From Chrysemys picta bellii (Eukaryota): a stretch of DNA of 64,000 nt. The position numbers and the translations under genes were made by a program. The DNA is taken from the NCBI RefSeq assembly GCF_011386835.1, contig NC_088812.1, positions 12,338,001-12,402,000 of the forward strand, read 5' to 3'. Of the stretch, positions 18,101-41,620 are shown piece by piece. The notes beneath the pieces are model-generated. The model was not told the origin of the DNA, did no database searches, and saw only the letters and a program-made list of their open reading frames with translations. The first letter of the stretch is position 1. The number at the start of each line of letters is the position of its first letter.

Positions 18101-18785
18101 CCCCCCATCCCCGTGTGTCTCAGTCCAGCCCATGGCCACTGAATGGGGAACCCCTCCCAGCTGCTGGGGTGGGGGCTGCGTAACCCAGGTGCTGCAGAAG
18201 CAGAGGTGGGGGGCATGGCAGGGGACACAAGAAAAGAATCGCAGCCCTGAGGAGACAGGAAGTGCTGTGCCTTCCGCTGGATGCAAGAGCCACCTTCACT
18301 TCCTGTCCTAAACTCCCCTGCCCAGTTGCTGCATGGCTGGATAAACACTGCCCCCGCCCCCAGGTGGTTGAATCTCAGCGCCGGGCAAGGCAAGGCATCC
18401 CTGTCTAAACAGCTGCCGTGCTCCACCCCAGAGGTGGCTGCATCTCACTAGTAACACAGAGGTGCCCGGGGCAGGTAGGCAGTGGCCCAGGAGGCAGGAA
18501 TGGGAGCCATGCATGGGGGGCTGTGCCCAGCCCTGCCTCACCAACCCCCTCCCCTCCCCAGACCTTAAGGTGCAGCGTCTCATCATGAACTTCATCTGCG
18601 ACCCCGACCTGAGCAAGGTGACCAGCTGCATGGAGCACGCGCTGCAGGCCAAGCACCCGCGCACGCGGTACAGTGCCGGCTGGGACGCCAAGCTGCTCTG
18701 GCTACCGGCCTCCTACCTGCCGGCCTTCCTGGTGGATGTTGTGCTGGCCACGATCCTGCCGAAGCCGGCTCGCCGCAGCCGCTAG
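15107..18785 (+). CDS. RDH5: 11-cis retinol dehydrogenase (SDR family), 4 coding exons; apparent 1-nt deletion in third coding exon
   Basis: Exons 15107-15419, 15580-15838, 17706-17868 and 18562-18785. Motifs TGCDSGFG (cofactor binding), GLVNNAG, YCVSK (catalytic YxxxK), IVEPGFFKT and C-terminal [13 protein letters not shown]. The position between BLOC1S1 and CD63 matches RDH5. The frame breaks near 17813 (see findings). AATAAA at 18855-18860. Confidence 0.93.
15820..17230. repeat. Minisatellite built from the RDH5 exon/intron junction (16 extra copies, units ~64-125 bp)
   Basis: Each unit carries ...ctctccgacagcctgcgGTGAG or a close variant. Donor-like GTs at 15903, 15979, 16063, 16158, 16241, 16306, 16383, 16508, 16573, 16650, 16775, 16840, 16965, 17030, 17136 and 17200. 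Confidence 0.92.
17360..17535 (+). repeat. Tandem copies (~77 bp, 3x) of a SINE-head-like module
   Basis: gggctagtggttag (A-box-like) ... gagccaggactcctgggttct (B-box-like) repeated. The same module recurs at ~7600, 19050-19215, 21990, 30000, 30910, 39420 and 59455-59580. Confidence 0.65.
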
Positions 18786-21063
18786 CCCCAGCGCTGTACG
18801 TGGGGTTTAGCCCAAAGAATGTGATTGGGCCCCGGCCCCCCAAAGCCTCTTGGAAATAAACCAGCCCCCAAAGGACGCCAGGCCTGGCCCGCTCGGTTCT
18901 GTTCACATTCCCCCGGGCAGGGACCGGGCAATTCCCCTTCCCAGCCTGGCTTCGCCTCCCGCCAGCCCCCTGCTCAGTGCGACAGCGGGGGGCTTCCTGG
19001 GTCTCGCCCCGCTGCTGGGAAGGGAGGGGGCCAGTGGAGTGTGGGGGGGGTCAGGACTCAGGGGTTCTCAGCCCAGCTGCTGGGAAGGGAGGGGGCCAGT
19101 GGAGTGTGTGGGGGGGTCAGGACTCCAGGGTTCTCAGCCCAGCTGCAGGGAAGGGAGGGGGCCAGTGGAGTGGGGGGGGGGGTCAGGACTCGGGGGTTCT
19201 CAGCCCAGCTGCTGGGAAGAGAGGCAGCCAGTGTGTGGGGGGGTGTCAGCTGCTCAAGGGGGCGCTGGGGCCAGGGCGCTGGAAAGCAGGACCCCTGGCT
19301 GGGCGAGTCACAGCCCGTGCCCACGCTGCCCTGGGGCTGTTACGGACTCACGGATCGTGCCCACTCTTGGCCCCGTGCGGTCCGTGAGGGGTGCCCCTGT
19401 AAGGGCCAGGCCCACCCGCCCGCAGCTCCCATCCTGCTAGCCCCGGCCCCGGGGCTTGAACCTGCAAAGCTCGGGGCTGGTTAGGTTCCCCTCCTGCAGC
19501 CCCACATGTGACCAGCAGGGGGCCCAGCTGGGAGACAGTAAATGTCACGTCCCACTAGCCCTCAATGGGGGCAGCCAGGCCTCCTTCGCTATGGGGGATG
19601 GGCTGCTCCCGGGGGGGGCACAGCTGGGCCCCTGCCCAATCCGAGCAGGCGGGAGTGAGCTGCTCCCAGCCGAGGGCTGGCCCCAGGTGAGTCGAGTTAC
19701 TGGGTCTCAGCTGCACGGCCCATGCACCAGCCTCAAGCAAGGCACATATGGGTCACGGAGCCCCCCTGCCTGGCCATTGGGGGCCCGGAGATGGAGCGGG
19801 GGGGTCCCCACGCCCACTGTGGGGGGCAGAGGGGACACCAGGAGGCCACCGGGCGCCAGGGCCGAGCCCCATGTCTGGTCGGCAGGGGGCCCCCGGCCTC
19901 ACCCCACGACTAGCTGATCCCCGGCCCCAGCCCAGGGGCTCCTGCTGGCTTGGAAGGGGCCAGGCTCTCAGCTGCTCAGCAGCAGGGCCCCCCCCCCCGC
20001 CTGTCTCCACCCAGCCCCCGGGGGCCCCGGTGGCTCCCCCCCCTTCCTGCTGCAGGAAGCAAGACCCTTCCGGAGGGGAGCGGCCGGACAAGTTTCCATG
20101 ACAACACTTGCCAGAGACCTTCAGGGGCTGAAAAATATTGAAGGGGGGGGGTGGGAAGAGATGAACAAGTCCAGCCCCCTCCCACCATGCTTTTGGGGGC
20201 GTGGGGGGGGGGGTCAAACACCAGCCCAGGCGGGTGAAATTCTTGGTGTGTGGTCACCAGCCCTGGGCTGGAAGGGGGGGGGGGTAACTCAGGGGTCAGA
20301 GGGATGGGGGGGCGGGGAAAAAATCACACATGCCCCCCCACTGAGCTGGGCACGAGGCTCCCGGTCCCGCTGCAGCAGCAGAGGGGTTAACACTTGGGGG
20401 CAGGCCCTGCCCCCCACTCACCACTGACGCGGGGGGGGGGTTGCTCCCCTGGGACCCCCAGCATGGACCCCCCAGGGCATGTGTGTAGGAATCCCCCCCC
20501 CTCCTGGCACTGACCCAGCCCGGGCTGCCCCAGTAACACCTGCTTTGAGCCCGGCAGACGCCCACACGGCCCCGGCTGCGGGGGGGGGGGGGGTGAGCAC
20601 AGGGGCATTTCGGAAACTGCCTTAACCACCCCCCACCCCCAAGAGCTGCCCCCTTGCCCCCCAAGCCGGGGCCGAAGGACCCAAGAAGCCCCGAGGCAGA
20701 ACAGAGCAATCCAGGGAAGCTTTTTATTTTCAAAATATTGTGCCCCCCCCCCAAACACATCTTCAAACATATCAACATTCCCCCCTCTCCCTAAAGACAG
20801 AGACCCCCCCCCGGACTCCCCTCCCCCGACACTGGAGAGGTGGGGGGGGAGGGGCAGCTAAAGAAAGAAAAGGGGGAGGGGGTTTGGCAAATATTTAAGG
20901 CACCTGCTGCCCCTCCATTAGAGGAAATATGGTAACCGCTGCAGGACAGGAGCTGCCCACCAGGGGGCGCTGCGGAAAGAAGGCGGGTCTGACGGCTTAA
21001 AGGGGCAGAGACACCCCCAACCCCCCAGAGTCCTGGCTGGGGCAGGACGACCCCGCCCGGCCA

Positions 21064-24000
21064 CTACATGACCTCGTAGCCGCGCCGGATCCCCCTCATG
21101 AGGCAGCAGGCGAAGACGATGCCCAGGAGCTGTAAGAGGGGACGAGGAGTCAGGCGATCACGATGCCAACACCCCCCCGGCTTTAACCCCCCACCCGCCG
21201 GGCACTGCCCGGCCCTGCGACTTTTGCCCTCCAGCCCATTAGAGGGAGGGGCACCCCCAGCTCACCCCCCAAAGCTCCCCGATCGGCCCCTCAGGGTCCC
21301 AGCTCTGCGCCCAGACCCAGCCGCGGGATCTAGGGAAATTGTCCAGCACCCTGGATTCCCCCACCCCACCCCCAGCACTGCCCCGCCCATCCGGGCTGCC
21401 CATGTCCGGACTCAGGAGCAGGGGCGGGGCATGCCGCGGGGCAGGACCAGGGCCAGGGGCGGGGCCAGGAGCAGAGGGGACCAGGGGCGGGGCCCTCAGT
21501 ACCTCGAAGAAGGCGATGCCCAGCGCCACGGCCGCCACGATCACAATATGTTTCTTCAGCCAGGCCTCGATGCTCTCCGCACAGCCCTGCAGCGGGAGCC
21601 GATGAGGTAGCTCAGAGACCCAGCTGGGACAGTGCAAACCCCCCTTTCCCACCAACCCTACCCACACCCGAGCCCTGCCCATCCCCACCAGCTCCAGCTG
21701 GGACAGTGTGAACTCCCCCTTTCGCCCCAGCCCTGCCCACACAGCCCCCCAGCCCCAGGCTGGAACTCACTTGGACGTTGATGGTGTCAGCGGTGGGATT
21801 GACGTTGCAGGTGGACAGGGTGGCGTTCGCCTGGCAGCAGGATGTGGGGACGCTGTGGTTGCTTTTGAACGGTTCGTATTTGAACCAGTCTGTGTAGTTA
21901 TGGGCTCCGCAGCAGGAATACTGTAAACAAGGAGAGAACCAGGGGTCAGAACAAGCAGGAGCTGTCTGGCCTCAGGGGCGTGAGGTCTAGTGGTTAGAGC
22001 AGGTGGCTGGGAGTCAGGACTCCTGGGTTCCCTCCCCAGCTGTGAGAGGGAAATTTGGTCCAGCATTTGGAACTAGGGCCTGCAACACCCCACCTGGTCC
22101 CCCAAATGAGGTCAAAGGTCACCCCCCCCACTCACTTTCTTCTGCAGTTCGTTCATGGTCTCCGCTACCAGCTCGTCCTTGCTGTATTTCTTCATGGCAT
22201 CCTCCAGGCCGCCCTGGAGCGCGGTGCGGACCTGGGGGGGGAGCAGGGGGGGTCAGAGCAGCCACATGCGTTTCCAGAGGCAGCGCCCAGGGGAACAGGG
22301 CTGCCGGGGCCGAGCGCCCCCTTGTGGGCTCTCGCGTCACCCACAACCTCGGCTGGAGGGGCCCGGACCCAGGCTGAACCCCACTGGCGATCCCCAGGCA
22401 GCCCCAAGAGACGCCTGCGCCAGGGGAGCAGGACCCCCGCCCCCCCAATCGCGGGAGCCACACGGCAGCGAGGTGCCCACCTTGTCCTTGAAGATGTACC
22501 CGGCGATGGCAGCCGCGATCTCCACCAGGAAGATACAGGTGAGCAGGACGGCGAACTGTGGGAGAGAACGGGGTGAGCCGTGCCCCTCAGCCCTGACCCG
22601 CAGCCCCCCCGCCAGCCCCGCCCCGGGCTCCCTGCCCCCACATCCGAAACCCTTGTGATGCCCCTGAATCCTGCCCCCCCAGCTCCCCACCGGGCTCCCT
22701 GCCCCCCAGCCCTAAACCCTTGTGATGCCCCTCAGTCCTGCCCCGCTGGCCCCCCCGCCCCCATCTCTGCCGCTGGCCGCGCCCCCTCACCGTGGTGACC
22801 ATGCAGTAGTTCTCCTTTGAGGCCCCGCAGCAGCCGAAGAAGGAGACGAAGAAGATGACGACGCCCACCACGATGATGACGATGGGGGCGCCCGAGGCCG
22901 AAGGGCTACTCATGATCAGTGTCTTGTTGAGCTCGAGCTGCACTAAGACCCCGATGACGATGAGGGCAATGCCGCAGAGCTGGAGGGGAAACGGGGGCAG
23001 GTCAACCCCGCGCAGCGCCTGGTCAGTGCCCCTCCCCCACACTCACCCCTCCCAGCCCCCGGCTGGCCCTGGGCCCCATCAGAGCCAAGAACGTGCTGCC
23101 CACGTCCCCTCTGCTGGATAGCACCTGACCTGCTCAGCTGTGTGTCACAGCCCCGTACTGCTGGCAGCTGATGGGGATTCGCCTGTAGCCGGGGTGGCTT
23201 TTGGAACGAGGAGGAGGGGGGACGCGAGTGCCAGTCCTGCCATCCTCAGGGAGTTCCTCTATTTGCTACAAGAGCTTAAATGTCCCCCCAGGATCCCGAA
23301 GCACATGCCAGGCCATGCTTGAAATGCAGCAACCTCTGGGGCAGGGCATGGCGACCTCGCAGCAGCAGTGCTGGAGAAAGGAGTTCCCTCCCCATCCCAC
23401 CAGGTCCTGCCCAGTATCCCCTCCTGGGGGAGGGGTTTGGATAGTTCGGGATACCACACACCCCCCAGCCAGGACATCAGGGTTCGCACCCCGAGCAGTG
23501 CCAGGGTGATGCCATGCAGACACCAGCCGCCCTGGCAGCATCTCAGACACCAGAATGGGGGGGGCAGAGACACCCCCACCCTAAAGACAATCTGGAGCAA
23601 GGGGAGGGGTGAGAACCCCCCCAATAAGGGGGAGATGTGCCAGGTAAGTCCCACCTGGCCCCAGAGAGCGACCCACACACAGACCCAGGCCCTGCGGCCT
23701 CCTTATCTCCTCATCCCATCTGGGGATCTCAAAGCACAAACTCTACTGAACTTCGCCTCCTCCACACTCCCATGTACACTACACTCCCCACGTGCTCTCC
23801 CCCCCCCACCAGCCTCCACCCCCTTCCCAAACAGCCCCGCCCGCCCTATTTACCTTTCCCTGCCCAAGGAACACAGACCCACAGGTGCATGGACGCCACC
23901 CACTTGCCAGGGATCAAGGGGCAGAGAGCGCTGCCAGCCCCGGGAGGGGGCACGGGGCAGGGTCATTCCCTGAACACATTGGGGAGGGGGGGGGCTCACC

Positions 24001-27000
24001 AGGGGCAGAGGCTGGCAGGGACCAAGACGCCCTGGCCCCACTCAGGGGGGGCAGATAGGGTCCGTGGCCCCACTGCCGGGCAAGGGCGCCACTGCTCAGC
24101 CGCATCACAGGACCCTACCCCACCCCCCGCGCCTGGTCCCACCCCACTGAGCGGGGGGTGATTTGGTACCAGCAGGACAGAGCTGGGGGCACCAGACCCT
24201 GTGTGGCTGGGGAGTCAGCACCCCCCAGGTCCGAGTACTGTAACCCCATGGGAGCCCCCCCCCGGGTATGTGTCCTGTGACTCTGGACCTCCCCTTTCTC
24301 CATCAGCCCCCCGGGAGGGGGGGTTCCTTGTGCACAGGGGGGTCGGGATCGGCTGGAACCAGCAGGGGGAGGGGCACGGGAAAATGCCACATGGGCGAAT
24401 AGGCCCCACCCCCGGGTGTGACCAGGCCTGGGGGTCCCCAACGGGGGAATAACGCCCCCCCCTTAATCCTGCCCTCCCTGTTCCCCCCCAAAGCCCAGCC
24501 GCCTTTCTCCCCCTCCAGCCCAGCTACATGGCGGGCGGCGGGGGGGTGGGGGGGGTGTTATTAAAGCCAAGCAACTCTGGAGCCTGGGTTTCCGGCCTGG
24601 CCTGCTCGCAGGCGGGGTGTGAGTGTGTGTGTGTGTGCGTGAGTGTCTGTGTGTGTGTGCGCGCGTTGTGAGGCCTCGCAGGGGGCAGAGGATTCTGGCA
24701 CCGGCTCTTCGGCTACAGGGCCCGATGCCAAACGCGACCCTCCCCCCCCCGCAGGGCCGGGCGGCTGCCACGTTAGCCCAGCCCTGGCTCAGCCCCCGCC
24801 CCCGTCAGCAGGACAAGCTCTTGGTGCGCAGCAGGGCCCAACCGGCCCTGCAACAAACCGCCTCCTGCTGCTGCCGGCGAGCTGCCCCAGGGGCAGGCCT
24901 GGCCCCCTCATCCCCACCTCCCCGGGGTGGGCTACGGGGGGAGGGGCGGGGAGCCAGGCCTCTGGGCTTCCCACCCTAGGAGGAGAGCAACATCCAGCGG
25001 TTAGAGCAGAGGTAGCTCAGGCCCCCCGGGTTCCGGTACCAACTCTGCCATAGTCAGGTCCCTTCCCCGTGCCTCAGTTTCCCCATCTGCCGAATGAGGC
25101 CGCTCCACCTTCTGGAGCCTTATTCCCTGGTGGGTTTTTTTTTTTGGGGGGGGGGGGGGGGGCAGCACAGGGCGCCGGTCAGAGACCCTGAGCCGAAGCC
25201 CTTTCAGTGACGTTCCATCCGCCGGGATCCCCACCCCGGGAAAGCCCCATGTTCTCTGCTCAGGTGTGTTTACCTGCCGGGGAAGGTAAACAGAGCGGCC
25301 AGCTTGCCGGCCTGTGCAAACACCGGGGACACTCCCCTGAGCTACTCACCAAGGACGGGCTGGGCCGGGCACCACTGACGCTGCCCCACGTCCCTGCCAG
25401 GCCGAGGGGAGATACAGACACAGCCACTGGGGTCACAAGGGCCACTGCCGTGCCAGACTCTCCTCATTCCCCCGGCTGCAGCCCACGCCCACCACTGAGC
25501 CCGACTGCGGGCACCTGGGCCATATCCCTGGCACCATGGGCGCTCCAGCACCGCCCCGGGACTCCCCGGTGCCAACGGGTCGTCAGGGTCCCCTTGCCAA
25601 CCTCTGTGGGACAGTGGCCAGGGCTGGGCACACGCCCCCTCCCCCGGGACCTCCCTGGCCGGGTGGGGCTGGGACAAGAGGCTCTGGCTTCTTCCCACCA
25701 TTGAGCAAGTGAGACCCCCGTGAGAGCCGCTCCTCCCGCCTACGAGGGGTGACTCAGCCCCCCCGTTCCCAGCAGGACGCGCCCTCCCCCTCCGGCCAGT
25801 TCCGTTGGGCAATCACTGCCCGATTACGATCGACACCCGGAGCCGTTAGGCGCTGCCCGGGTCTTTCCCCACCAGCCACTTCCCCCTGGGCACATGACGC
25901 CGGCTGCGATAGCATCTCCCTCGGGGCGGGGGCCCAGCACCGTGACAGGCCCCCTCCGCGCCCAGCTCCCGGGACCACGGCCCCCGAGGTCACTGGGTCA
26001 TGGACAGGCCGTGGCAGCGTCAGCAGAGGTGTCAAGGGGGGAGGGGGCATCTGTCCAGGGCAGGCGAGGCCAGCCCTGAATACGCTGCCGTGCGGCCCAG
26101 CATAAAGTCTCCAGCCGCTCTTGGAAAAAAATGCTTATGACTCACTCACTGCCTTGGGGCGTTACCCCTGAAACCTAATGCTGGCTGGTTATATGTCAAC
26201 AGTGCAGCTGCTGGGCTATTAGCAACAAGTCACCAGCTGCTCGGGGGGGGGGGGGGGGGGGGGGAACGACACACCTTCCCTAGCTGACTCCTCTTTAGGA
26301 TTAGCTGCCCACCCCCCCACCCCCCAAATCCACACCCCCCAAACAAGTCAGCCGCTGCCAAGCAGACACCTTCCAGACTTCCTGCCCCGGAGCACCAGAA
26401 AAAGCCTCACGGCCCAGTCAACCATCCCTTGTGCCCCACCCCAGCGGAGAGCCGGGAGCAGCCAGGGAAGGCCCCGTCGCCTCACCTGCAATTCTGGGCT
26501 GGTTTGCACCCTCCAGACACATTAAATGGAAACTCCTGTAACCCCAGGGCGTGAGCTGGGCGGTGCCATCGCTAGCCAAGGCCTGTACGAGGCGGCGGCA
26601 CTATGCTCTCTGCCAAGGAAAGTCAGAACCCCAAGCCTGTTGTCATAGACCCCATACTGCAAACAGGCAGGGGAGAGTCCCGTGTGCTGGTCCTGGGCGA
26701 CCTGGGGGCACTGTGGCCACGAAGGTCTGAGTGGCACCAGGTTCGTGACAATACTAGCCAACTTCCTCGACTCCCTGGCCCCAGTGTGAGGCCGATGCTC
26801 TGTGCGTTTGTAGGGCCCTTTGGAGCCCCCATTAGCCACCAGAGCTGGGCCGCAGCTAGTCCACGTCCTGCCCCCACAGCAGGGAAAAGGAGCCTCTCTG
26901 GGGCTGGGCCAGAGCCCAGAACCCGGCTCCGAGCTTCCGAGGGGCTCAGGGCTGAGAGTCGGAATCTCTCTGGTCTCCCTAATGAGCCCAACTGGCTCCT

Positions 27001-27526
27001 CGGCCCCACACATCAGCCCCAGCCCGGGCCCATCTAGCCCGGCCTCCAACCTACCAGCAACGGGGACAACCAGCCCCCGTGGACCTTCCGCCCAGCCCCA
27101 CCCCAGGTTAGGCCCAGCTCATGCCCTGCCACAGAGGGGGGTCAGCCCCCCACATCCTGAGAGACCCGAACCCCCCACCTGCCACAGCCCCTGTCCATGG
27201 GGAGCCCCATGGTCCAACTCCAGGGATGCAGTTTGCAGCTGACCCTGGGGAGTCTCCAGCCTCCCCCCCTCACCCCCCGCAGAGCTGGGCTGGACCCTGG
27301 GACCTCCCAGCCATGGCTCGGCCCCCCAGATCCCCGCCAGCAATGGGGCAGGGAGACACGCCCATGGGCGCTGGGGGGGGACTAGGGGGTGGGGGTGACG
27401 CAATCAGGAGCCGGCCCGAGGGAACGAGGGGTGCGGGGGGGGGGGCCAGGCCCGACTCACCCAGAACAAGAAGTTGAAGAAGAAAACCAGGAACTTGACG
27501 CATTTCATGCCGCCTTCCAACGCCAT
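21064..27526 (-). CDS. CD63: CD63 tetraspanin (LAMP-3), 7 coding exons, 241 aa
   Basis: Minus-strand exons 27526-27461, 22979-22791, 22555-22481, 22231-22136, 21920-21771, 21586-21503 and 21129-21064, all GT-AG and phase 0. Starts MALEGGMKCVKFL, has the CCG motif (YSCCGAHNYTDW) and ends in the GYEVM lysosomal sorting signal. A probable non-coding exon 1 ends at 27740. PolyA signal (tttatt on +) at 20723-20728. Confidence 0.97.
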
Positions 27527-28150
27527 GGCGCCCGGTGCTGGGGAGGGACAAAGCGCTCAGAGCCGCCGGCGGGGGGGGGGGGGGGGGGGTGCGGAGCAGC
27601 CGCCGCCCCCCCCGTCTCCCGCGGAAACACCCCCCCTCCCGCCAGAATCCCCCCCCCGAGCCCCCCAGCCCGGCCCCGCCCGCCAGATCCCCCCCGCCTC
27701 GGCCCCCCAAAGCGCCCGAGACGAGCCCCCCCCCCTCACCTCGGTCCCCCCGAAAGCCGCGGCCGCTCTGTGCCCCGGGACGCAGCTCCGGTCACTTGAC
27801 TGCTCGGATCCACGCAGGTAGCGGGAGGGGCCCCGGCACCACGTGACCCCTGTGAGTCAACAGGAAACCCGCGTGGGCGTGGGGCGGCCCCGGCCCCGGC
27901 CCCGCCCCTGGGTGGGTCCCAGCCCCGGCTCCAGGGGCCCCGGTTAACCCCCCCCCCCCCCCCCGCCGGGCCCAGGGTGACCCCGCCAGCCCCGGGATCT
28001 GCCCCCCCCCCACGCGCGGCCCCCACGTGACCTGAAATCCCCCCCCCCCCCCCCCCGCGCCCCGGGAATTAACAGCAACTTCCTCCAGCTCCAGGGCCAC
28101 ACAGCTGCTGAGGCCGGAGCCGCCGAGCTGCGGCCCAGGGTCAGACAGGC
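27500..28150 (-). promoter_or_regulatory. CD63 CpG-island promoter
   Basis: CpG-dense region upstream of the CD63 ATG with GC boxes, CACGTGAC at 27840-27847 and 28024-28031, GTCACTTGAC 27791-27800 and AP-1 TGAGTCA 27853-27859. Confidence 0.7.
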
Positions 28151-32387: not shown

Positions 32388-33120
32388 GCCGTACTGCCCC
32401 GACCCCCCTGACCAGGCAGCGGGGAGCAGCTGCCGGGGCCCTGCTGGGGGCCTGGCCCCCGAGCTCACTGCTCATCCCTGGGCAAAGCGCACCCTGGCTC
32501 GAGAGGGAACTGCCCGGCTGGGCCGAGGGGGGAACGTTTCCTGCCCAGCAGGGTTTATACAGCCCGGCTGCTCCTGCCCCCTGCTGGCTCCGGCTGGTAG
32601 CATAGCATGGGGCCTGCTGCCGTGCCCAGAGGGGTCTGGTGCAGTGTGCCCCGCCCCGCCCCAGTCCCAGAGCGCTCCAGGGCCGGGTAGAACCCGGTGC
32701 CCAGGAGCACCAGCCGGGCAATAGCTCTGGAGATGGGGTGGCCGGGCCAGGGGCCTGGCCTGGGGCGAAGGAGGGAGAACACATGAAAGGCGAGAGGGCA
32801 GGAACAGAAACGCACTGTTTAATGGGGGGCCAGGAAACACCCCCTGTGGCAGAGGCTGGCACAAGCGGGCGCCCGCAGCACTAGCAGAGGGGGGTGGGGC
32901 TGGAAGGCTCCGGGGGGGAGGGGAGGTGGCACCTCTCTGGGGCCTTTGCCCCATGCGTAAGGTCTGCGGCACCTGCCAGGAGCAGTGGCTGCCTGCAGCC
33001 CCCTGCCCCCCCTCCGAATGGTGCTGCCAACCTCACCCCTTCGCGCCCTTGGGGCCAGACTGCCCCCACCCCCACCGGCGGAGCCAGGCCCTCCCCCCCG
33101 GCAGGGCAGTCCCCTGCGGG

Positions 33121-36100
33121 TCACAGGGCAGCAGTGGTCAGAGTGGCCAGCACCACCTCCAGGTGTTCGCGGTGCATGAAAGCCACCAGGCCGCCCCGGT
33201 TGGCCCAGCGCTCAGCCCCCACGGCGCCCGCCGCAGGCTGGTTGTAGGTCAGCTCCGGCAGCGCCCCCCGCTGGCCAGCGCGCCAGGCCTGCAGGGCAGC
33301 CTCTAGGTCCACCATCCCTCCGCCCAGAGCCCGCAGGATGGCATGGGGGGCACACGAGTCCCACTTGAAGGTGCTGCCCTCCGAGAGGACGTAGGCCTCG
33401 GCCAGCCCCAGGATCACACATAGCATCTTGTAGCCGGCGCCCGAGGCGAAGCGCAGCCGCTCCCCGTACAGCGGCCTCAGCGCCCGCTGGATCGCCGGCG
33501 TCTCGCTGCTGCTCAGGACGACGCAGGGCTCGGGGCGTAGCGGGGGCCGGTGCAGCGAGGCCAGGCTGGTGCCCTGGTACGAGATGCCCCAGTGATACAC
33601 ACCCTGCCACCTGCAGACAGGAGAACACAACAGGGACAGCACCAGCTGCGACAGGGAGCTGACAGCAGCTGCTCAGGAGAGGAGCTCGGGGGCTGGGGGA
33701 GCGGGGAGCCCAGGGCTGGGCTAGCAGGGGGCTGCGGATCAGGAGTGAGGGGCACCGGCAGAGCTGGGGAAAGGGGGAGCCCAGGGGTGGGCTAGCAGGG
33801 GGCTGCGGGTCAGGACTGAGGGGCACTAGCCGAGCTGTGGGGTGCAGAACCCAGGGCTGGGCTCGGAGGGGGCTGCGGGTCAGGACTGGGGGACACCAGC
33901 AAAGCGTGTGTGGGAGAGGATCACACACACCCTGGGGGGGTCCCTGCCATGAACTGAAGCTGATCAGAGGTAACCAGGAGCCTCAGAGCCAGCAGCCACT
34001 GGCAAATACAATTTAGACAGGGCTACTATAAGGTGGGTGCATAACTGGCTGGATAACCGTACTCAGAGAGTTGTTATTAATAGTTCCCAATCCTGCTGGA
34101 AAGGCACAACGAGTGGGGTACCGCAGGGGTCGGTTTTGGGACCGGCTCTGTTCAATATCTTCATCAACGACTTAGATATTGGCATAGAAAGTACGCTTAT
34201 TAAGTTTGCGGATGATACCAAACTGGGAGGGATTGCAACTGCTTTGGAGGACAGGGTCATAATTCAAAATGATCTGGACAAATTGGAGAAATGGTCTGAG
34301 TTAAACAGGATGAAGTTTAACAAAGACAAATGCAAAGTGCTCCACTTAGGAAGGAACAATCAGTTTCACACATACAGAATGGGAAGAGACTGTCTAGGAA
34401 GGAGTACGGCAGAAAGGGATCTAGGGGTTATAGTGGACCACAAGCTAAATATGAGTCAACAGTGTGATGCTGTTGCAAAAAAAGCAAACGTGATTCTGGG
34501 ATGTATTAACAGGTGTGTTCTTCCGCTCTACTCTGCTCTGGTTAGGCCTCAGCTGGAGTATTGTGTCCAGTTCTGGGCACCGCATTTTAAAAAAGATGTG
34601 GAGAAATTGGAAAGGGTCCAGAGAAGAGCAACAAGAATGATTAAAGGTCGTGAGAACATGACCTATGAAGGAAGGCTGAAAGAACTGGGTTTGTTTAGTT
34701 TGGAAAAGAGAAGACTGAGAGGGGACATGATAGCAGTTTTCAGGTATTTAAAAGGGTGTCATAAGGAGGAGGGAGAAAACTTGTTCACCTTAGCCTGTAA
34801 GGATAGAACAAGAAGCAATGGGCTTAAACTGCAGCAAGGGAGGTTTAGGTTGGACATTAGGAAAAAGTTCCTAACTGTCAGGGTGGTTAAACACTGGAAT
34901 AAATTGCCTAGGGAGGTTGTGGAATCTCCATCTCTGGAGATATTTAAGAGTAGGTTAGATAAATGTCTATCAGGGATGGTCTAGACAGTATTTGGTCCTG
35001 CCATGCGGGCAGGGGACTGGACTCGATGACCTCTTGAGGTCCCTTCCAGTCCTAGAATCTATGAATCTATGAATCTATGAAAGCAACACCCCCACCCCCT
35101 TCTCTCTGCCCCAGTCCCTGGGGGAAGGGTGGGGTTGGTGCAGGCCAAGGGCTCCACCGAGTGGCCTGCCCCAGGTGGGTTTCCCCAGCAAGGTCCTGGT
35201 GCTGGGGCGCTTGCAGACCCCCCTAGCCCAGGACGTGCCCAGGGCAGGGCTCAGGGGAGATCCGGGGGTGAGTACCTGTGGGTGAGGGGGTCCTCCCGGA
35301 AGAACGGCTCGTTGATGACCCCCAGGACCGGGTCCCCCGAGCTGCGGTCGTACGCCCCAATGAGCACCAGCGCCGAGCACAGCCCGGACGGGCAGATGCC
35401 ATCGATGGGCGCCACGCGGGCCTGGCCGCGGATGTACTGATTGGTGGAGTCTGCCAGAGAGAGGTGACGTCAGAACCAGGCTCCGAGCCCCGCCCGGGGC
35501 AGAGTGCAAAGCCCACCAGCCAACAAAGCCACGTGGCTCCCTTTGTCCTCGCCTTGCGGGCCACTGGGCAACAAGTTCTCTGGGTCTCAGCACGACTGGC
35601 GCTAACTGGGGGTCTCAGCCCTACAGGGTCCCTCCAGGGCAGGGAGGAGCCACCTTGGGGGTGGGGCCAGGGGTCAGCACCTTTTCCCAGCGCCAGGACA
35701 CCCTAGTTGGTCAGCTGCTCCTGGCGCCCCCTGGTGTCATGCTGGGGGATGGCAGCGAGGGCCCCCCTTACCGATGGGGTCGATCCAGATGGCCAGTCTC
35801 TCCGGGGGGATTGCCAGCGCCACTGCGTCCAGCGCCGGGTCCTGCAGCGCCACCTCCTGGTGGATGGCGGCTGCCAGCAGCTCGGCCGCTGGCTGGTTCC
35901 GGTCCAGGATTGTAAAGAGCAGCGAGGCCGTGTCCTGCTGGGTCGCACACACCTGCACCACCAGGGTCTCTCCTGCGGGCAGACGGGCTTAGCCAGACAG
36001 GGCAGGCTCAGGGGCTCCCAGTACAGTGTGAAGTGGGGGGACCCCCCACCCCAGTACAGGACCAGCTCAGAGCCCTCCCCACCCCATGCTGGGGCAGGCT

Positions 36101-36720
36101 GCGTGGGAGACCAGGACCCCACTCTGCAGGGTACAGCGCCCCCCGCTGGTAGCTCCGTCCCGTGCCCACGCCGCCAAGTCACTCACCCAGGCTGTTCTCA
36201 AACTGGTTGGACTCCTCCCCGCCGATGTGGCCGCGCAGCTCCGGGAACTGAAAGAGACAGGGAGGCTCAGGGCAGCACAAACGCCTTGTCTCAGGCCCAT
36301 GAGACTCCATCTCCCTTGGTCTAGGGGTGAGGGGATCCTGGAGCGGGGTGTCCATTGATGGGGATCGAGACAGCTCCTTGCCTCAGGGATATGATGCCCT
36401 CCCCATGCCCCCAAGAGGCACCCCCTGCTCCCGCCTAGGCACCACCCCCACCCCCTGGATGCAGTCGGGCAGGCGGAGAGGAGAGGCCCCCAGCCCCGCA
36501 GGGCGCCCACGGGTACCTCCTTGCCCACGTCGTGCTTTATGACCTCCTGGATGAGCACGTCCGCCAGCGTCTTGAAATCCTGCACAAACTTCTTGTTCTT
36601 GTCGGTGCCCGTCTTCTCCTCGATGAGCAGCTGGAAGAGCGCCTCCTCCTGGCGGCACAGCTGGGCGATGCGGGCCGACTTCTCCGACGCCCCCACCAGG
36701 CTCTTCAGCAGGGCTGCCAT
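33121..36720 (-). CDS. Inositol polyphosphate 1-phosphatase-like protein (INPP1 paralog), 5 coding exons, 376 aa
   Basis: Minus-strand exons 36720-36517 (204 nt), 36247-36187 (61), 35972-35772 (201), 35450-35276 (175) and 33610-33121 (490), GT-AG and in frame with no internal stops. Contains DFKTLAD, GEES, WIDPIDST, GAGYK and FKWDSCA motifs of the INPP1/IMPase metal-dependent phosphatase family. ATTAAA-type polyA signal (tttaat on +) at 32818-32823. Confidence 0.92.
33690..33895. repeat. GC-rich minisatellite (GGAGTGAGGGGCAC family), degenerate
   Basis: About 3 copies in the last intron of the INPP1-like gene. Confidence 0.7.
34002..35079 (+). mobile_element. CR1 LINE, 5'-truncated, in intron 4 of the INPP1-like gene
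   Basis: ORF 34037-34984 with RT motifs ([28 protein letters not shown]), a CR1 3' UTR and an octamer tail (TCTATGAA)n at 35055-35079. Confidence 0.95.
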
Positions 36721-37939
36721 GGTGGAGCGGGGGTCTGGAAGGGAGGCAGAGATAGATGGCACCCCGGATCCCCCTACACCTTCCCACAGGCCAAGAGAGA
36801 CCAGAGCCCACCAGAAGGGGAAAAGGAAAGTCCAGTGGTTAGAGGGCAGGACTGGGGGAGCAGGGCTCCCAGGTCCATGGGGAAGGGAAGCGGGGCTAGC
36901 AGGAGAGCAAGGGGCTAGGAGCCAGTTCTGTGCCTGATCCGCTGCATGACTTTGGACAAGTCCTGTCTCCAGGCCTCAGTTTCCCCTCCGAAATGGGGAG
37001 AGATGAGCCTTGTCTCCCCCTCTCATGGAGTTGCAGGGCAGGCTGGAGTGGGGCCAGGACCACCACCCGGCATCGTGGTGCCAAAGGGGTTAACAAAACC
37101 CGGCTCAGAATAGCGGGTCTAAAGCAGCAGCCGGGGAGTTGCTCTGAGACGGGGGAGCCGCCTGCCAGCCGGGGCAGGGCTCACCCCAGCTCCAAAGGTT
37201 TCTGTGAGAGGCACATGCCAAAATTAACCCAAACTGCTACCAGATGTGACAGAGGCCAGGCCAGGCCGAGTGCCAGAGGGCAGGGGAACGCCACAGGGAC
37301 TCTGGCCCGGCCTGGGGCCATGCCATGGGGCCGTGGATCGACCCACGGGGACTCTGGCCCGGCCTGGGGCCGTGAATTGTCCCATGGGGCCGTGGATCAA
37401 CCCACGGGGACTCTGGCCCGGCCTGGGGACGAACCATGGGGCTGTGGCTCGAGCCACAGGGCTCCGGCCCGGCTCACTCCCCCACGCAGTTTCCTTCTGG
37501 GGGATGCTGCCTTTGGTGCCAGGGCAGAGCACTGGGCCAAGCTGGCAGCGTGTGGGGGAGGGGAAGGAGACTGGGGCAATTCCCCCGGCCCCTCCTGTTG
37601 CCGCCCCGGCCCCCCTCGCTGGCTTGGAGGGGGCGAGGCGGCTGGTGGGGAACAGCCCTGGCAGGGGTCGGCTGGGAGACCGCCCCCCCACCGGTGCTAT
37701 GGGCCTGCCCCATCAGAGCCCTGGGCTCCCGGGGGGGGGGGCAGCCCCCTCCCCCTGGGCCATACAGGGCCAGCAGCGCATACAGCTCCCTGGCCCGGGC
37801 CCCACAGAGACCCCGACCCCTCCCCTCCCCTCCAGGGGCGACCCCACCCTGCCTGAGTCAGGCGCCCACCCGGCCCCACATTAACCCCTTCAGTGCCGAA
37901 CAGCATCCCAGGCAGGAGCCCAGCGGCAGCAGCCCCCCC

Positions 37940-38160: not shown

Positions 38161-39250
38161 GCAATCCGGGCCCCCCTCGCGTGCAGCATCGTGCCGCTCC
38201 CCCCGGCCCCCCCGTACCCGCCGGGCTCAGGGATGCTGCGGCCGCTCGCGGGCGCTGACGGATCACGGGTGGGATCGTCCCGACACCCCCGCGAGGGGCG
38301 GGTCCCCGCCCGGCCATGTGACGCCGCGGGGTTAACCCCTTCGGGGCCGGGCTGCCCCACATCCCCCCGCCCCCCGCCCCAGGGGCTTGGGCGTCGAGCC
38401 CGGGAGTTCCCGGGTTTGGATCGGAGCCTCCGCTCCAGGCCCTGGCCGTGCCCCCCGCCCCGCTAGTCACAGGGGTTATCGCTGGGGAAATCGAGGCACG
38501 GGGGTGGGGGGGTCCGGCCAGTCAGCGCAGAGCCAGGAATAGAACCCAGGAGTCCTGAGTCCAGCCTCCCTCCCTCCCAGGACCCCCCGCCAGGGCCGGG
38601 AATAGAACCCAGGAGTCCGGGGTCCCCCTCGCCCCCGCCAGAGCTGGGAATAGAACCCAGGAGTCCGGGGTCCCGCCCCTCTCCCGCGAGAGCTGGGAAC
38701 AGAACCCAGGAGTCCGGGATCCCGCCCCTCCCCCGCCAGAGCTGGGAACAGAACCCAGGAGTCCGGGGTCCCGCCCCTCCCCCGCCAGAGCTGGGAACAG
38801 AACCCAGGAGTCCGGGGTCCCGCCCCTCCCCCGCCAGAGCTGGGAACAGAACCCAGGAGTCCGGGGTCCCGCCCCTCCCCCGCCAGAGCTGGGAACAGAA
38901 CCCAGGAGTCCGGGGTCCCGCCCCTCCCCCGCCAGAGCTGGGAACAGAACCCAGGAGTCCGGGGTCCGCCCCTCCCCCGCCCCATTCGCAGGGTCCGGAC
39001 CCTGCCCTCCCCGGGGCCCGGGGCTGGTCGGAGCCGGGAGCGGGGCAGAGTTGGGCCGGATCGGGCCCGCCCGGTAAGACCCCGTTTCTAACCTGCCAAG
39101 ACCCGAATTTCGGGTTCTGGGTTTCCCAGGCAACCGCTGGTGACATCAGCACGGCAGAACCGGGCCCACTCTCAGGCCTTGGTGATGTCATCAGCCGTTG
39201 CCATGGTGAAACAGCGAGCTCTGAACTCAGGTCCTGACAGGTCAGTAAAA
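38150..39250 (-). promoter_or_regulatory. Probable CpG-rich promoter region of the INPP1-like gene
   Basis: CpG-rich segment 1.4-2.5 kb upstream of the ATG-bearing exon (acceptor at 36735), with GC boxes, CATGTGAC 38315-38322 and X-box-like motifs at 39121-39134 and 39197-39212. The TSS cannot be determined from sequence. Confidence 0.5.
38535..38980. repeat. 49-bp tandem repeat (~9 copies)
   Basis: The unit gagctgggaacagaacccaggagtccggggtcccgcccctcccccgcca; the central copies are identical. Confidence 0.92.
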
Positions 39251-40034
39251 GAGGAACTGATTTTCCCGCTCTCAGATTATTCTGACACCTGGCACTTTAC
39301 ACACCTTCACGAACAAGACCCCGGGACCGCCCCCCCCCCCCCGCGCTCAACAGGGGAAACTGAGGCAGGGAGGGGGGAGACTTCAGCCTGGCCACACAGC
39401 AAGGCTGGCATAGCCGGGGATGGAACCCAGGAGTCCTGACCCAGCCCCACCCCCGCTCTAACCACTAAGCTGCCCCCAAAGACCCTCCCTCTGCCCCCAG
39501 ACACGCCTCAGCCCCTTGCCCCAGACAGGCAGGGGAGGCCCAGCCTCGCCCTGGGGCCTGCTCCCTTCCTGCAGGGGGTCTGGGCCGGATCCCTGGGCCT
39601 GGGGGGCTTCTCGCCGCCCCCGGGGGGATCAGGCGCCTGGAGCGGGGTCCAGCAGCACTGGAGGGAAGGGAGCTGAGCCCAGAAACGGTCTCACGGGAGC
39701 TGCCTTCGGGGCCAGTGCTGGGACGCAGGGGCCCAAGGGAAGCAGGAGTTTTACGGAGAATCAGAAATCCAGGGGCCGCAGGGCCCAGCCCCATCGCAGG
39801 AGCAGTTCCCGGGGCCCGGTGCCTTATGCTGCGTTGGGTGTTTTATCCTCGCCCCGTGATGGCCAATGGCTCCGGAACGCCCCTTCCTTTGAGGGCCACG
39901 GCCCTGCAAGCCCCGGCTCGGGGCGTGGGCCGGTGTGGGGCTGCCGGGGAGACAAGGGGAGGGGGAGCCAGCCACAGCCAGGGAGGGAACCACACTCACT
40001 GCCTTCACTCCATTGTGCCAGGGTACCATGATCC

Positions 40035-41015
40035 CGACCCGCAGCCCCTGCTATGGGCTTCCCCACCCAGCGCTGCCGGTGCCCCTCACTCCCGACCCGC
40101 AGCCCCCTGCTATGGGCCCCCCCGCCCAGTGCTGCCGGTGCCCCTCACTCCCGACCCGCAGCCCCCTGCTATGGGCTCCCCCCGCCCTGCACTGCCGGTG
40201 CCCCTCACTCCCGACCCGCAGCCCCCTGCTATGGGCTCCCCCAACCCAGCGCTGCCCGTGCCCCTCACTCCCGACCCCCAGCCCCCTGCTATGGGCTCCC
40301 CCCGCCCAGTGCTGCCAGTGCCCCTCACTCCCGACCCACAGCCCCCTGCTATGGGCTCCCCCCGCCCAGCGCTGCCGGTGCCCCTCACTCCCGACCCGCA
40401 GCCCCTGCTATGGGCTCCCACCGCCCTGCACTGCCGGTGCCCCTCACTCCTGACCCGCAGCCCCCTGCTATGGGCTCCCACCGCCCTGCACTGCCGGTGC
40501 CCCTCACTCCTGACCCCCAGACCCCGCTATGGGCTCCCCCGCCCAGCGCTGCCGGTGCCCCTCACTCCCGACCCGCAGCCCCCTGCTATGGGCTCCCCCC
40601 GCCCAGCGCTGCCGGTGCCCCTCACTCCCGACCCGCAGCCCCTGCTATGGGCTCCCCCCGCCCAGCGCTGCCGGTGCCCCTCACTCCCGACCCACAGCCC
40701 CCTGCTATGGGCTTCCCCACCCAGCGCTGCCCGTGCCCCTCACTCCCGACCCGCAGCCCCCTGCTATGGGCTCCCCCCGCCCAGCGCTGCCGGTGCCCCT
40801 CACTCCCGACCCGCAGCCCCTGCTATGGGCTCCCCCCGCCCAGCGCTGCCGGTGCCCCTCACTCCCGACCCACAGCCCCCTGCTATGGGCTTCCCCACCC
40901 AGCGCTGCCGGTGTCCCTCACTCCCGACCCGCAGCCCCCTGCTATGGGCTCCCCCCGCCCAGCGCTGCCGGTGTCCCTCACTCCCGACCCGCAGCCCCTG
41001 CTATGGGCTCCCCCA
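40035..41015. repeat. ~60-bp GC-rich minisatellite (reverse orientation of the GGAGTGAGGGGCAC family)
   Basis: The unit cccccgcccagcgctgccggtgcccctcactcccgacccgcagccccctgctatgggct, roughly 16 copies. Confidence 0.92.
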
Positions 41016-41620
41016 GACTCACACCCATACACCCCCCGGGGCTGGGCTAGGCCAGGCCATTAGCTCCCCGCCTGGCTCTGCTGACTCCAGCCGCAGGAGG
41101 CCGGGGATGCTGCACGCTCCGCCTCCACTAGGTGGTGCTCTGAACCCTGCTCTAGACAGAGAAGCGGGGGGGGGGGGGGCCTTGATATCAGTGGTTAGGA
41201 ACTGGGGATCTATTCTGGCACCCAACAGCCCAAGTTGAACCGACCCTGAGTCCACCCAGGCCACAGCAGGTGCTAAAAGCCCCCCCTCCCCCGGAGACTC
41301 AGTGACCACGGACCCAGGGGCCCAGGTTCCAGAGCTCTGGGGCACCCGCGGAAACACCCCGGCACCGACAAACCCGGAGCTGCTTTGGAGACGGGTTCTC
41401 ATTCTTCGTAAGCGGCCCAGAGCCACGTGCTCATGCCCCCAGCGCAGGGCCAGACGAACCGCAGTGCTCAGCTTGGGAGCTGTTTGGGCCAGGGACCGGT
41501 TTCTGGTTCTGTGTTTGTACAGCGCCTGGCGCACTGGGTGCCCGGGCCGGGCCTGGAGCTCCTAGGTAGCACCGCAATGCAAGGGGAATAAGAAGTCACA
41601 GGAACTCAGCTGCGGATGTT

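What the first reader, a model, noticed from the sequence alone, without database searches (positions are those of the whole stretch)
33121..36734. Intact INPP1 paralog between CD63 and GDF11: probable 2R ohnolog absent from the mammalian locus
Seen: a complete, stop-free 5-exon gene (204/61/201/175/490 nt, 376 aa) with the metal-binding motifs DFKTLAD, GEES, DPIDST and WDSCA. Established: human CD63 and GDF11 are neighbours with no such gene between them, and the single human INPP1 lies on 2q32 near MSTN, the GDF11 paralog (the 2q32/12q13 paralogon also pairs NAB1/NAB2, GLS/GLS2 and STAT genes). Inference: this is a second INPP1 from vertebrate genome duplication, kept next to GDF11 in this lineage and lost in mammals. 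It is clearly diverged from human INPP1 as I recall it, and lacks roughly 20 aa of the loop after the YWGxSY segment. That would mean a second, probably Li+-sensitive Ins(1,4)P2/Ins(1,3,4)P3 1-phosphatase with possibly different substrate range or tissue expression.
Basis: partly seen in the sequence, partly recalled or inferred. Interest (0 to 1): 0.8.

Follow-up and report, generated by a model that had tools for sequence, protein, structure and literature searches.

The report
Second INPP1 gene beside GDF11
This turtle's only working inositol polyphosphate 1-phosphatase gene is an ancient duplicate of the human lithium-target gene INPP1, not its counterpart. The true counterpart sits beside myostatin as a dead gene, so "INPP1" in reptiles and birds names a different gene from the human one.

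Summary
There is a 5-exon, 376-codon, GT-AG-spliced INPP1-family gene on the minus strand (CDS 33121-36720), between CD63 and GDF11.

- **Expression and constraint:** RNA contigs from four studies join all four predicted junctions. dN/dS is about 0.2.
- **Active site:** every metal and substrate ligand of crystallised bovine INPP1 is kept.
- **Two clades:** vertebrate INPP1 proteins split into clade A (sharks, sturgeon, amphibians, mammals) and clade B (sharks, ray-fins, lungfish, coelacanth, caecilians, all sauropsids). The window gene is in B. Each clade mirrors the species tree. AU tests reject orthology with mammalian INPP1 and reject a tetrapod-only duplication.
- **The A copy in this genome:** the human-type position (MSTN-HIBCH-x-MFSD6, contig C11) holds an A-type pseudogene. 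It has five stops, two frameshifts, missing parts and a lost catalytic Asp.
- **Synteny:** stork, alligator and flatback turtle have the same CD63-INPP1B-GDF11 order.

This gene is the sole intact INPP1 here, not a second enzyme. The short loop is ancestral; clade A gained about 20 residues.

The gene is already annotated in relatives as INPP1 or INPP1-like. The reciprocal-loss reading was not found in the searchable literature. Interest is moderate.

The parts
39093..39158 (-). 3' end of an upstream non-coding (5'UTR) exon. The donor GT is at 39092-39091. The true start of the exon was not determined.
   Evidence: An RNA contig (X13) runs on for 63 letters beyond 36737. Those letters match the window uniquely at 39096-39125.
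36517..36734 (-). First coding exon. The acceptor AG is at 36736-36735, followed by 14 nt of 5'UTR. The ATG is at 36720-36718 and the exon carries 204 nt of CDS (codons 1-68, including D54 of DFKTLAD).
   Evidence: contigs end or join at 36735-36737; junction 36247|36517.
36187..36247 (-). Coding exon 2 (61 nt), with the GGEES motif holding metal ligands E79 and E80.
   Evidence: (junctions 35972|36187 and 36247|36517 in four runs).
35772..35972 (-). Coding exon 3 (201 nt), ending in WIDPI of the DPIDST metal-binding motif.
   Evidence: (junction 35450|35772).
35276..35450 (-). Coding exon 4 (175 nt).
   Evidence: junction 33610|35276, which skips 1665 nt.
33990..35082 (+). CR1-type LINE fragment with an open reverse-transcriptase frame and an (ATGAATCT)n tail, inside intron 4. 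It is not part of the mRNA.
   Evidence: ORF 34037-34984; skipped by the spliced contigs; repeat-level depth.
33121..33610 (-). Coding exon 5 (490 nt including TGA). It holds the short loop, the GAGYK substrate-binding segment and WDSCA (catalytic Asp).
32803..33120 (-). 3'UTR, with an ATTAAA signal at 32823-32818.
   Evidence: RNA contigs reach 32852, 32859 and 32803. The signal was found.
21018..27644 (-). Neighbouring gene CD63 (tetraspanin).
   Evidence: Tetraspanin Pfam hit at window 22791-22979. Collinear with flatback-turtle CD63. tblastx to alligator CD63.
52575..52871 (+). Neighbouring gene GDF11, exon 1. The gene body runs off the window; its last exon is at C22:12422686-12422970.

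Best explanation
The gene is the 'B' member of an ancient pair of INPP1 genes. The pair arose before sharks and bony vertebrates split, most likely in the vertebrate whole-genome duplications that also produced MSTN and GDF11.

The B copy stayed beside GDF11 and CD63. It survives in sharks, ray-finned fishes, lungfish, coelacanth, caecilians and all sauropsids. It is absent from the mammal, frog and salamander proteins sampled. The A copy stayed beside MSTN, HIBCH and MFSD6. It is the INPP1 of mammals and amphibians. In this turtle it is a decayed pseudogene.

The window gene is therefore the animal's only intact inositol polyphosphate 1-phosphatase. By inference from complete conservation of the catalytic and ligand residues, it removes the 1-phosphate from Ins(1,4)P2 and Ins(1,3,4)P3 by the three-metal Mg2+ mechanism, and lithium should inhibit it at metal site 3 (Asp54/Glu80).

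Shown here: gene structure, splicing, purifying selection, clade membership, synteny, and the pseudogene. Inferred: enzymatic activity, lithium sensitivity, and the assignment to 2R rather than another pre-gnathostome event.
For: - **Structure and family:**
- **Spliced RNA:** all four junctions appear in four runs from four studies.
- **Selection:** dN/dS is 0.21 against flatback turtle (bootstrap 0.11-0.37), 0.20 against alligator and 0.38 against stork. Of 13 transcript variants, 10 are synonymous.
- **Active site:** D54, E79, E80, D153, I155, D156, S157, T158, E269, G290, A291, K294 and D317 (bovine numbering, PMC7948987) are all kept in the window protein, and nearly all in 25/25 clade-B rows (S157 is Ala in 5 of 25; E269 is Asp in coelacanth).
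- **Tree:** 47 rows give clade A at 100/99 and clade B at 96/93, each with sharks at the base and a species-tree-like order. A shark (Pristiophorus), a sturgeon and two caecilians have both copies.
- **AU tests:** tetrapod A+B as one clade, p 1.3e-6. Mammal A plus sauropsid B as one clade, p 5e-6.
- **Own genome:** the order is MSTN-type exon C11:51247388-672, HIBCH exons 51340968-51412999, A-type remnants 51448950-51453994, then MFSD6 51487608-51507307. The remnant carries 5 in-frame stops, 2 frameshifts, P154N and D317N. Its exon 1 and the first ~70 codons of exon 5 were not found. It groups as sister to mammalian INPP1 (91/83) and is rejected from clade B at p 2.4e-6.
- **No third locus:** a marsupial A query finds only these two loci.
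- **Synteny of B:** GDF11|INPP1B|CD63|RDH5|BLOC1S1 in stork and alligator, and GDF11|INPP1B|CD63 in flatback turtle. In fishes it lies beside DNAJC14-like and PAN2, both 12q13 genes in human.
- **Introns:** at least three of the four intron positions are shared by A and B.
Against: - No enzyme assay was possible, so activity and lithium inhibition rest on residue conservation.
- No cyclostome or amphioxus sequence was included, so 1R, 2R and another pre-gnathostome duplication cannot be told apart.
- Absence of A in other sauropsids, and of B in mammals, frogs and salamanders, rests on their not appearing among the 120 best named proteins of three searches. Their genomes were not searched.
- Support for clade B as a whole is 96/93, and 93/92 in the smaller tree. 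This is good but not maximal.
- The individual stops of the pseudogene were read from the assembly only. Independent DNA runs hold 0.83-0.96 of the region's words, but no reads were laid on it.
Confidence: 0.86

Rival explanations
1. It is a single-lineage gene: the ortholog of human INPP1, moved from the MSTN region to the GDF11 region in sauropsids.
For: NCBI names the bird, lizard and crocodilian gene simply 'inositol polyphosphate 1-phosphatase'. No intact second copy exists in this genome.
Against: An A-type pseudogene still occupies the HIBCH-MFSD6 position. The window protein groups with shark, fish and caecilian B proteins, not with mammals. Forcing mammal A plus sauropsid B into one clade costs 166 lnL units, p-AU 5e-6.
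Confidence: 0.02
2. It is a younger, lineage-restricted segmental duplicate (tetrapod or sauropsid age) that only looks old because one copy evolved fast.
For: Clade A sits on a fairly long stem: 0.43 in the first tree and 0.24 in the second.
Against: Sharks, rays and sturgeon carry both types, and each clade reproduces the species tree. Tetrapod A plus B as one clade is rejected at p 1.3e-6. The two copies lie beside the paralogous pair MSTN and GDF11.
Confidence: 0.02
3. It is an old duplicate from before the gnathostome crown, but from a small-scale duplication or from 1R rather than 2R. On this reading the link to MSTN/GDF11 is partly coincidental, or reflects a duplicated block rather than a whole genome.
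For: Nothing here dates the split relative to cyclostomes. Only one flanking paralogous pair (MSTN/GDF11) was verified in this genome.
Against: The 2q32/12q13 regions are a recognised paralogon (established knowledge; recalled, not tested here). The fish B genes also sit beside other 12q13-type genes, DNAJC14-like and PAN2. Intron positions are shared, as expected for a DNA-level block or genome duplicate.
Confidence: 0.09
4. It is an annotation-like artefact or a decaying gene: an open frame by chance, or a recently dead copy.
For: The region is 68% G+C, where long spurious open frames are common.
Against: It matches a solved INPP1 over its full length at E 2.4e-115. It has exact GT-AG introns that RNA contigs confirm in four studies. 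dN/dS is 0.2-0.4 with intervals that exclude 1. All catalytic residues are intact.
Confidence: 0.01

Closest known systems
Mammalian INPP1 (bovine enzyme, PDB 1INP / 6WRO / 7KIR; human gene at 2q32 beside HIBCH, MFSD6 and MSTN)
   Same: - It has the same fold family (PF00459) and aligns end to end at about 52-55% identity.
- The metal motif D54...E79E80...D153PID156ST158...D317 is identical, as are the 4-phosphate ligands K294, G290, A291 and E269.
- At least three of the four intron positions match.
   Different: - It is a paralog, not an ortholog. It belongs to clade B and lies beside GDF11 and CD63 rather than MSTN and HIBCH.
- Its loop after xWGxSY has 18 residues against 36-44 in clade A.
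- The gene is compact, about 6.4 kb from the known 5' exon to the poly(A) site.
'INPP1' / 'INPP1-like' as annotated by NCBI in other sauropsids, caecilians, fishes and sharks (e.g. Dermochelys, Mauremys, Alligator, Ciconia, Rhinatrema '-like', Rhincodon '-like')
   Same: These are orthologs of the window gene at 95% identity (turtles) down to 56% (sharks). They fall in the same clade. In stork, alligator and flatback turtle they occupy the same CD63-x-GDF11 position.
   Different: Nothing of substance differs. The public names do not separate the two ohnologs, so B is called INPP1 where A is missing and '-like' where both exist.
BPNT1 / 3'(2'),5'-bisphosphate nucleotidase (PDB 1JP4, 2WEF), the next nearest lithium-sensitive family member
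   Same: It shares the core fold and the metal-binding motif. The match covers residues 130-319 at E ~1e-16.
   Different: The similarity is far weaker and only partial. The window protein has the INPP1-specific N-terminal region and overall architecture.

Membership tests
INPP1 enzyme family (Li+-sensitive, Mg2+-dependent phosphomonoesterases, Pfam PF00459) | Inositol_P domain above Pfam's gathering score | tested here: met
   108.4 bits against a cut-off of 27, E 6e-31.
INPP1 enzyme family (Li+-sensitive, Mg2+-dependent phosphomonoesterases, Pfam PF00459) | End-to-end similarity to a crystallised INPP1 rather than to IMPase, BPNT or FBPase relatives | tested here: met
   1INP at E 2.4e-115, residues 2-371 against 2-389. 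The next family (BPNT1) reaches only E 1e-16.
INPP1 enzyme family (Li+-sensitive, Mg2+-dependent phosphomonoesterases, Pfam PF00459) | Metal-site motif D54...E79E80...D153-P-I155-D156-S-T158...D317 (PMC7948987) | tested here: met
   All are present in the window protein. All are invariant in 25/25 clade-B rows except S157, which is Ala in 5.
INPP1 enzyme family (Li+-sensitive, Mg2+-dependent phosphomonoesterases, Pfam PF00459) | Ligands of the substrate 4-phosphate: K294, G290, A291, E269 | tested here: met
   They correspond to K275, G271, A272 and E250 of the window protein. All are conserved in clade B except E250, which is Asp in coelacanth.
INPP1 enzyme family (Li+-sensitive, Mg2+-dependent phosphomonoesterases, Pfam PF00459) | Hydrolysis of the 1-phosphate of Ins(1,4)P2 and Ins(1,3,4)P3, with uncompetitive Li+ inhibition | not testable with these tools
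   This needs a recombinant enzyme assay. It is inferred here only from residue conservation.
Ortholog of human INPP1 (clade A, MSTN-linked) | Groups with mammalian INPP1 in a gene tree | tested here: not met
   The window protein lies in clade B. One clade with mammals is rejected at p-AU 5e-6.
Ortholog of human INPP1 (clade A, MSTN-linked) | Lies between HIBCH and MFSD6 near MSTN | tested here: not met
   That position (C11:51.45 Mb) holds the A-type pseudogene. The window gene is on C22 between CD63 and GDF11.
Ortholog of human INPP1 (clade A, MSTN-linked) | Long (36-44 residue) polar loop after xWGxSY | tested here: not met
   The window protein has 18 residues there, as do the other sarcopterygian clade-B rows; across clade B the range is 18-23.
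Vertebrate whole-genome-duplication ohnolog pair | Both copies contain cartilaginous and bony vertebrates, with a single-copy invertebrate outgroup outside both | tested here: met
   Tree of 47 rows: A at 100/99, B at 96/93, vertebrates against invertebrates at 100/98.
Vertebrate whole-genome-duplication ohnolog pair | The copies lie in paralogous chromosomal blocks | tested here: met
   The A remnant is beside a myostatin-type exon and B is beside a GDF11-type exon in the same genome. Fish B genes lie beside 12q13-type genes. The wider paralogon (NAB, GLS, STAT) was recalled, not tested.
Vertebrate whole-genome-duplication ohnolog pair | Same exon-intron structure (not a retrocopy) | tested here: met
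   Boundaries fall at codons 68/69, 88/89, 155/156 and 213/214 in B. Matching breaks appear in frog A and in the turtle A remnants, except that 88/89 was not resolved in frog A.
Vertebrate whole-genome-duplication ohnolog pair | Timing between the invertebrate-chordate split and the gnathostome crown, resolved to 1R or 2R with cyclostomes | not tested
   No lamprey, hagfish, amphioxus or tunicate sequence was retrieved.
Live protein-coding gene | Spliced transcripts and purifying selection | tested here: met
   All four junctions appear in RNA contigs of four studies. dN/dS is 0.20-0.38. Synonymous to non-synonymous transcript variants are 10:3.

The most novel reading that the evidence does not exclude
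Sauropsids, and possibly most ray-finned fishes, lungfish and coelacanth, run inositol-phosphate recycling on the B ohnolog alone. The ortholog of the human lithium target was lost, perhaps once in the sauropsid stem, and turtles keep the fossil because their DNA evolves slowly.

Every 'INPP1' result from chick, lizard and probably zebrafish would then concern a paralog that diverged more than 450 million years ago. B keeps the ancestral short loop. The ~20-residue polar or acidic loop of clade A would be a derived feature, perhaps with a regulatory role of its own, that mammals depend on and birds do without.
Probability: 0.35. Interest if true: 0.55.

Novelty: new member of a known kind. Interest (0 to 1): 0.45.

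Why it matters
INPP1 is one of the few enzymes inhibited by lithium at therapeutic concentrations, and it is treated as a single-copy vertebrate gene.

This locus shows there are two ancient copies, retained differentially:
- mammals, frogs and salamanders keep A;
- birds, crocodilians, lizards and turtles keep B;
- sharks, sturgeon and caecilians keep both.

Cross-species comparisons that equate chicken or reptile "INPP1", and probably the fish gene, with the human gene compare paralogs. This is hidden paralogy. It affects orthology tables, rate and selection analyses, and the reading of lithium or inositol-signalling experiments in non-mammalian models.

The case also offers a natural experiment. 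Either copy alone suffices for a tetrapod, and species with both copies allow a test of subfunctionalisation and of what the A-specific loop does. As genome evolution it is a clean but not unusual case of reciprocal ohnolog loss, here with the losing copy still visible.

Tried and rejected
- **Earlier notes:** The search of earlier findings near the window returned nothing.
- **Contig look-ups:** P0002 and P0001 (isoform products) were not on record. The catshark B and bullhead-shark A loci came without DNA or neighbours. The frog A locus had no called neighbours within 10 kb. Synteny of shark and frog copies therefore stays untested.
- **Diagnostic A/B substitutions:** there are no fixed differences. 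Only two near-fixed ones exist (positions 2 and 182), neither at a known ligand. A changed substrate range is not supported.
- **Missing pseudogene parts:** a search for exon 1 and the 5' part of exon 5 across C11:51413701-51473700, at E up to 50, found nothing credible.
- **Age of the pseudogene:** back-of-envelope estimates from branch length (0.44 against about 0.2 expected) and from stop density range from roughly 60 to over 200 million years. That is too loose to choose between one stem-sauropsid loss and several later losses, so no age is claimed.
- **Literature:** searches for INPP1 with ohnolog, paralog, GDF11, MSTN or synteny found no paper.
- **First exon guess:** my first boundaries were off by two bases and gave a frame-shifted translation. 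This was corrected.
- **Structure prediction:** judged unnecessary given the E 1e-115 match to solved structures, and not run.
- **Output overflow:** the tblastx for CD63 produced a very long, mostly repeat-driven output. Only its top hits were used.


Full report
**Observation**

The gene lies on the minus strand. Its exons are 36517-36720, 36187-36247, 35772-35972, 35276-35450 and 33121-33610, measuring 204/61/201/175/490 nt. Each is flanked by AG and GT. Joined, they give a 376-codon frame ending in TGA, with the motifs DFKTLAD, GGEES, DPIDST and WDSCA. My first boundary guess was two bases off.

Pfam Inositol_P scores 108 bits against a cut-off of 27. Bovine INPP1 (PDB 1INP) aligns from residue 2 to 371 at E 2.4e-115, with a net 18-residue gap after the xWGxSY segment.

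**Is it a live gene?**

I laid contigs of four RNA-like runs on 32600-37000. The runs come from four studies and carry two organism labels. In every run a contig of 1.0-1.5 kb skips exactly the four predicted introns: 33610|35276, 35450|35772, 35972|36187 and 36247|36517, all with CT..AC ends on the + strand.

- **3' end:** the contigs extend through a 3'UTR to about 32803-32859. An ATTAAA signal sits at 32823-32818.
- **5' end:** the contigs stop or jump at 36735-36737, where an acceptor AG lies. One contig continues with 63 letters that match the window uniquely at 39096-39125. An upstream non-coding exon therefore ends at 39093, with donor GT at 39092-39091.
- **Selection:** codon comparison with orthologous loci gives dN/dS of 0.21 against flatback turtle (bootstrap 0.11-0.37), 0.20 against alligator (0.14-0.27) and 0.38 against stork (0.28-0.50).
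- **Variants:** of 13 coding differences seen in the transcripts, 10 are synonymous.

**What the protein should do**

The structural paper on bovine INPP1 (PMC7948987) defines three sets of residues:
- the family motif D54...E79E80...D153PID156S157T158...D317;
- the three metal sites, with lithium acting at site 3 through D54 and E80;
- the ligands of the substrate 4-phosphate (K294, plus the main chain of E269, G290 and A291).

All are present in the window protein. All are invariant in the 25 clade-B rows except S157 (Ala in 5 of 25) and E269 (Asp in coelacanth). No position is fixed differently between the two clades. Only two are nearly so (positions 2 and 182), and neither is a known ligand.

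The inferred function is therefore ordinary INPP1 chemistry: Mg2+-dependent removal of the 1-phosphate of Ins(1,4)P2 and Ins(1,3,4)P3, inhibited by lithium. This is inference.

**Organism and relatives**

The best hits are turtle proteins at 94-96% identity (Terrapene, Mauremys, Dermochelys, Natator). Next come squamates and crocodilians (71-77%), birds (58-73%), caecilian '-like' proteins (63-64%), lungfish, sturgeon, teleosts and sharks (55-62%). No mammal, frog or salamander appears among the 120 best.

Mammalian INPP1 is only about 52% identical, no closer than a starfish INPP1. With a bat INPP1 as query, frogs and a salamander follow the mammals at 60-63%, and no sauropsid appears. A salamander query adds second, different proteins from two caecilians, a sturgeon, three sharks and a ray.

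**Phylogeny**

I built an IQ-TREE (LG+C20 PMSF) tree of 47 rows, rooted on four invertebrate sequences. It has two vertebrate clades.

- **Clade A (100/99):** sharks and a ray, then sturgeon, then frogs, a salamander plus caecilians, and mammals.
- **Clade B (96/93):** sharks and rays, then ray-finned fishes, then lungfish and coelacanth, caecilians and sauropsids. The window gene sits among the turtles.

Each clade repeats the species tree. A sawshark, a sturgeon and two caecilians have one protein in each clade. AU tests reject all tetrapod sequences as one clade (p 1.3e-6) and mammal A plus sauropsid B as one clade (p 5e-6). The split predates the gnathostome crown.

**The other copy in this genome**

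A search of the whole assembly with the window protein, and again with a marsupial clade-A protein, finds only one further locus, on contig C11. Its neighbours run in the human 2q32 order:
- an exon encoding the mature myostatin-type peptide at C11:51247388-672;
- HIBCH-type exons at 51340968-51412999;
- MFSD6-type exons at 51487608-51507307.

The INPP1 remnants lie between HIBCH and MFSD6, at 51448950-51453994.

| Remnant | State |
|---|---|
| Exon 2 equivalent | Intact, 86% identical to marsupial and caecilian A |
| Exon 3 | Two stops; WVDPI changed to WVDNI |
| Exon 4 | A stop, a frameshift and another stop |
| Exon 5 | A frameshift and a stop; FKWDSCA changed to FKWNCYA, which removes the catalytic Asp317 equivalent |
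| Exon 1 and first ~70 codons of exon 5 | Not found anywhere in 60 kb |

Read through with X at the breaks, the remnant groups as sister to mammalian INPP1 (91/83) on a long branch. It is rejected from the sauropsid B clade at p 2.4e-6. DNA runs under several organism labels hold 0.6-0.96 of the region's sampled words. The sequence is therefore not peculiar to this assembly, although I could not lay reads on it.

**Synteny of B**

- **This genome:** the window gene lies between CD63 (tetraspanin exon at 22791-22979) and GDF11. GDF11 exon 1 is at about 52575-52871. Its last exon, at C22:12422686-12422970, encodes the GDF11-type mature peptide.
- **Flatback turtle:** the locus is collinear with window 21663-62240 and is annotated GDF11|INPP|CD63.
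- **Stork and alligator:** both show GDF11|INPP|CD63|RDH5-like|BLOC1S1-like. In the stork this is on a 3.2-Mb chromosome.
- **Fishes:** a teleost B gene lies beside a DNAJC14-type gene, and the bowfin B gene beside PAN2. Both are 12q13 genes in human, by established knowledge.
- **Introns:** at least three of the four intron positions coincide in B, in frog A and in the turtle A remnants. This argues against retroposition.

**The loop**

Between the xWGxSY motif and the following strand, clade B has 18-23 residues. The four invertebrate outgroups have 17-24. Clade A has 36-44. The short loop is ancestral, and clade A gained about 20 polar or acidic residues.

**Interpretation**

This is an old ohnolog-type paralog of INPP1, kept beside GDF11 and absent from mammals. 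The translocation alternative it named as a refutation is excluded.

Three refinements apply.
1. The gene is the sole intact INPP1 of this turtle.
2. By the protein searches, the same seems true of all sauropsids. Mammals, frogs and salamanders kept only the other copy. This is reciprocal loss with hidden paralogy in public gene names.
3. There is no sign of an altered active site.

'2R' itself remains an inference from the MSTN/GDF11 paralogon. No cyclostome sequences were available. The wider distribution rests on capped protein lists, not genome searches: A absent from teleosts, lungfish and coelacanth, and B absent from mammals and batrachians.

**Novelty**

The gene is already annotated in relatives as INPP1 or INPP1-like. 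Four literature searches found no paper describing two vertebrate INPP1 ohnologs or their reciprocal loss. Comparative-genomics databases may show it implicitly.

I rate it a new, or at least unrecognised, member of a known kind, of moderate interest. It is a clean example of differential ohnolog retention with the fossil of the lost copy still in place. It also has a practical consequence for anyone equating bird, reptile or fish 'INPP1' with the human lithium target.

Noticed in passing
G000:C11:51448950-51453994 (loci L008, L009): This is a unitary pseudogene of the mammalian-type INPP1, between HIBCH and MFSD6 and about 200 kb from MSTN. It has 5 stops, 2 frameshifts and the changes P154N and D317N. 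Exon 1 and part of exon 5 are missing. RNA-like runs X36 and X11 hold 0.42 and 0.36 of the region's sampled words, so it may still be transcribed.
   Followed up: partly
window 33990-35082 (+): A CR1-type LINE fragment with an open reverse-transcriptase frame (ORF 34037-34984) and an (ATGAATCT)n tail sits inside intron 4. It accounts for most of that intron's 1665 nt. The same intron is only about 70-145 nt in stork and alligator.
   Followed up: partly
window 9309-9572, 33693-33905, 40029-41016, 60695-61660, 62637-63234: A G-rich tandem repeat family with a period of about 60-70 bp is scattered through the window, including intron 4 of the gene and the GDF11 intron. It is also present in the flatback-turtle locus (L015:591-1082 and 26676-26946).
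   Followed up: no
window 39093-39210 (-): The upstream non-coding exon of the gene contains a short upstream open frame (ATG GCA ACG GCT GAT GAC ... TGA, about 10 codons). The 5' end of the exon and any further upstream exons were not mapped. One RNA contig carries 339 more letters upstream of the first coding exon.
   Followed up: partly
window 35890: The assembly reads T where contigs of all four RNA runs read C. The difference is synonymous (Pro116). It is either an individual variant or a base error in the assembly.
   Followed up: partly
window 49842-50010: An assembly gap of 169 N lies between the gene and GDF11.
   Followed up: no
L015 (flatback turtle) 10001-27520: The public gene model there is 539 aa over 17.5 kb and starts within 500 bp of GDF11. 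It is probably an over-extended N-terminus. The turtle RNA contigs here support a start codon at window 36720 and a 5' exon only about 2.4 kb upstream.
   Followed up: no
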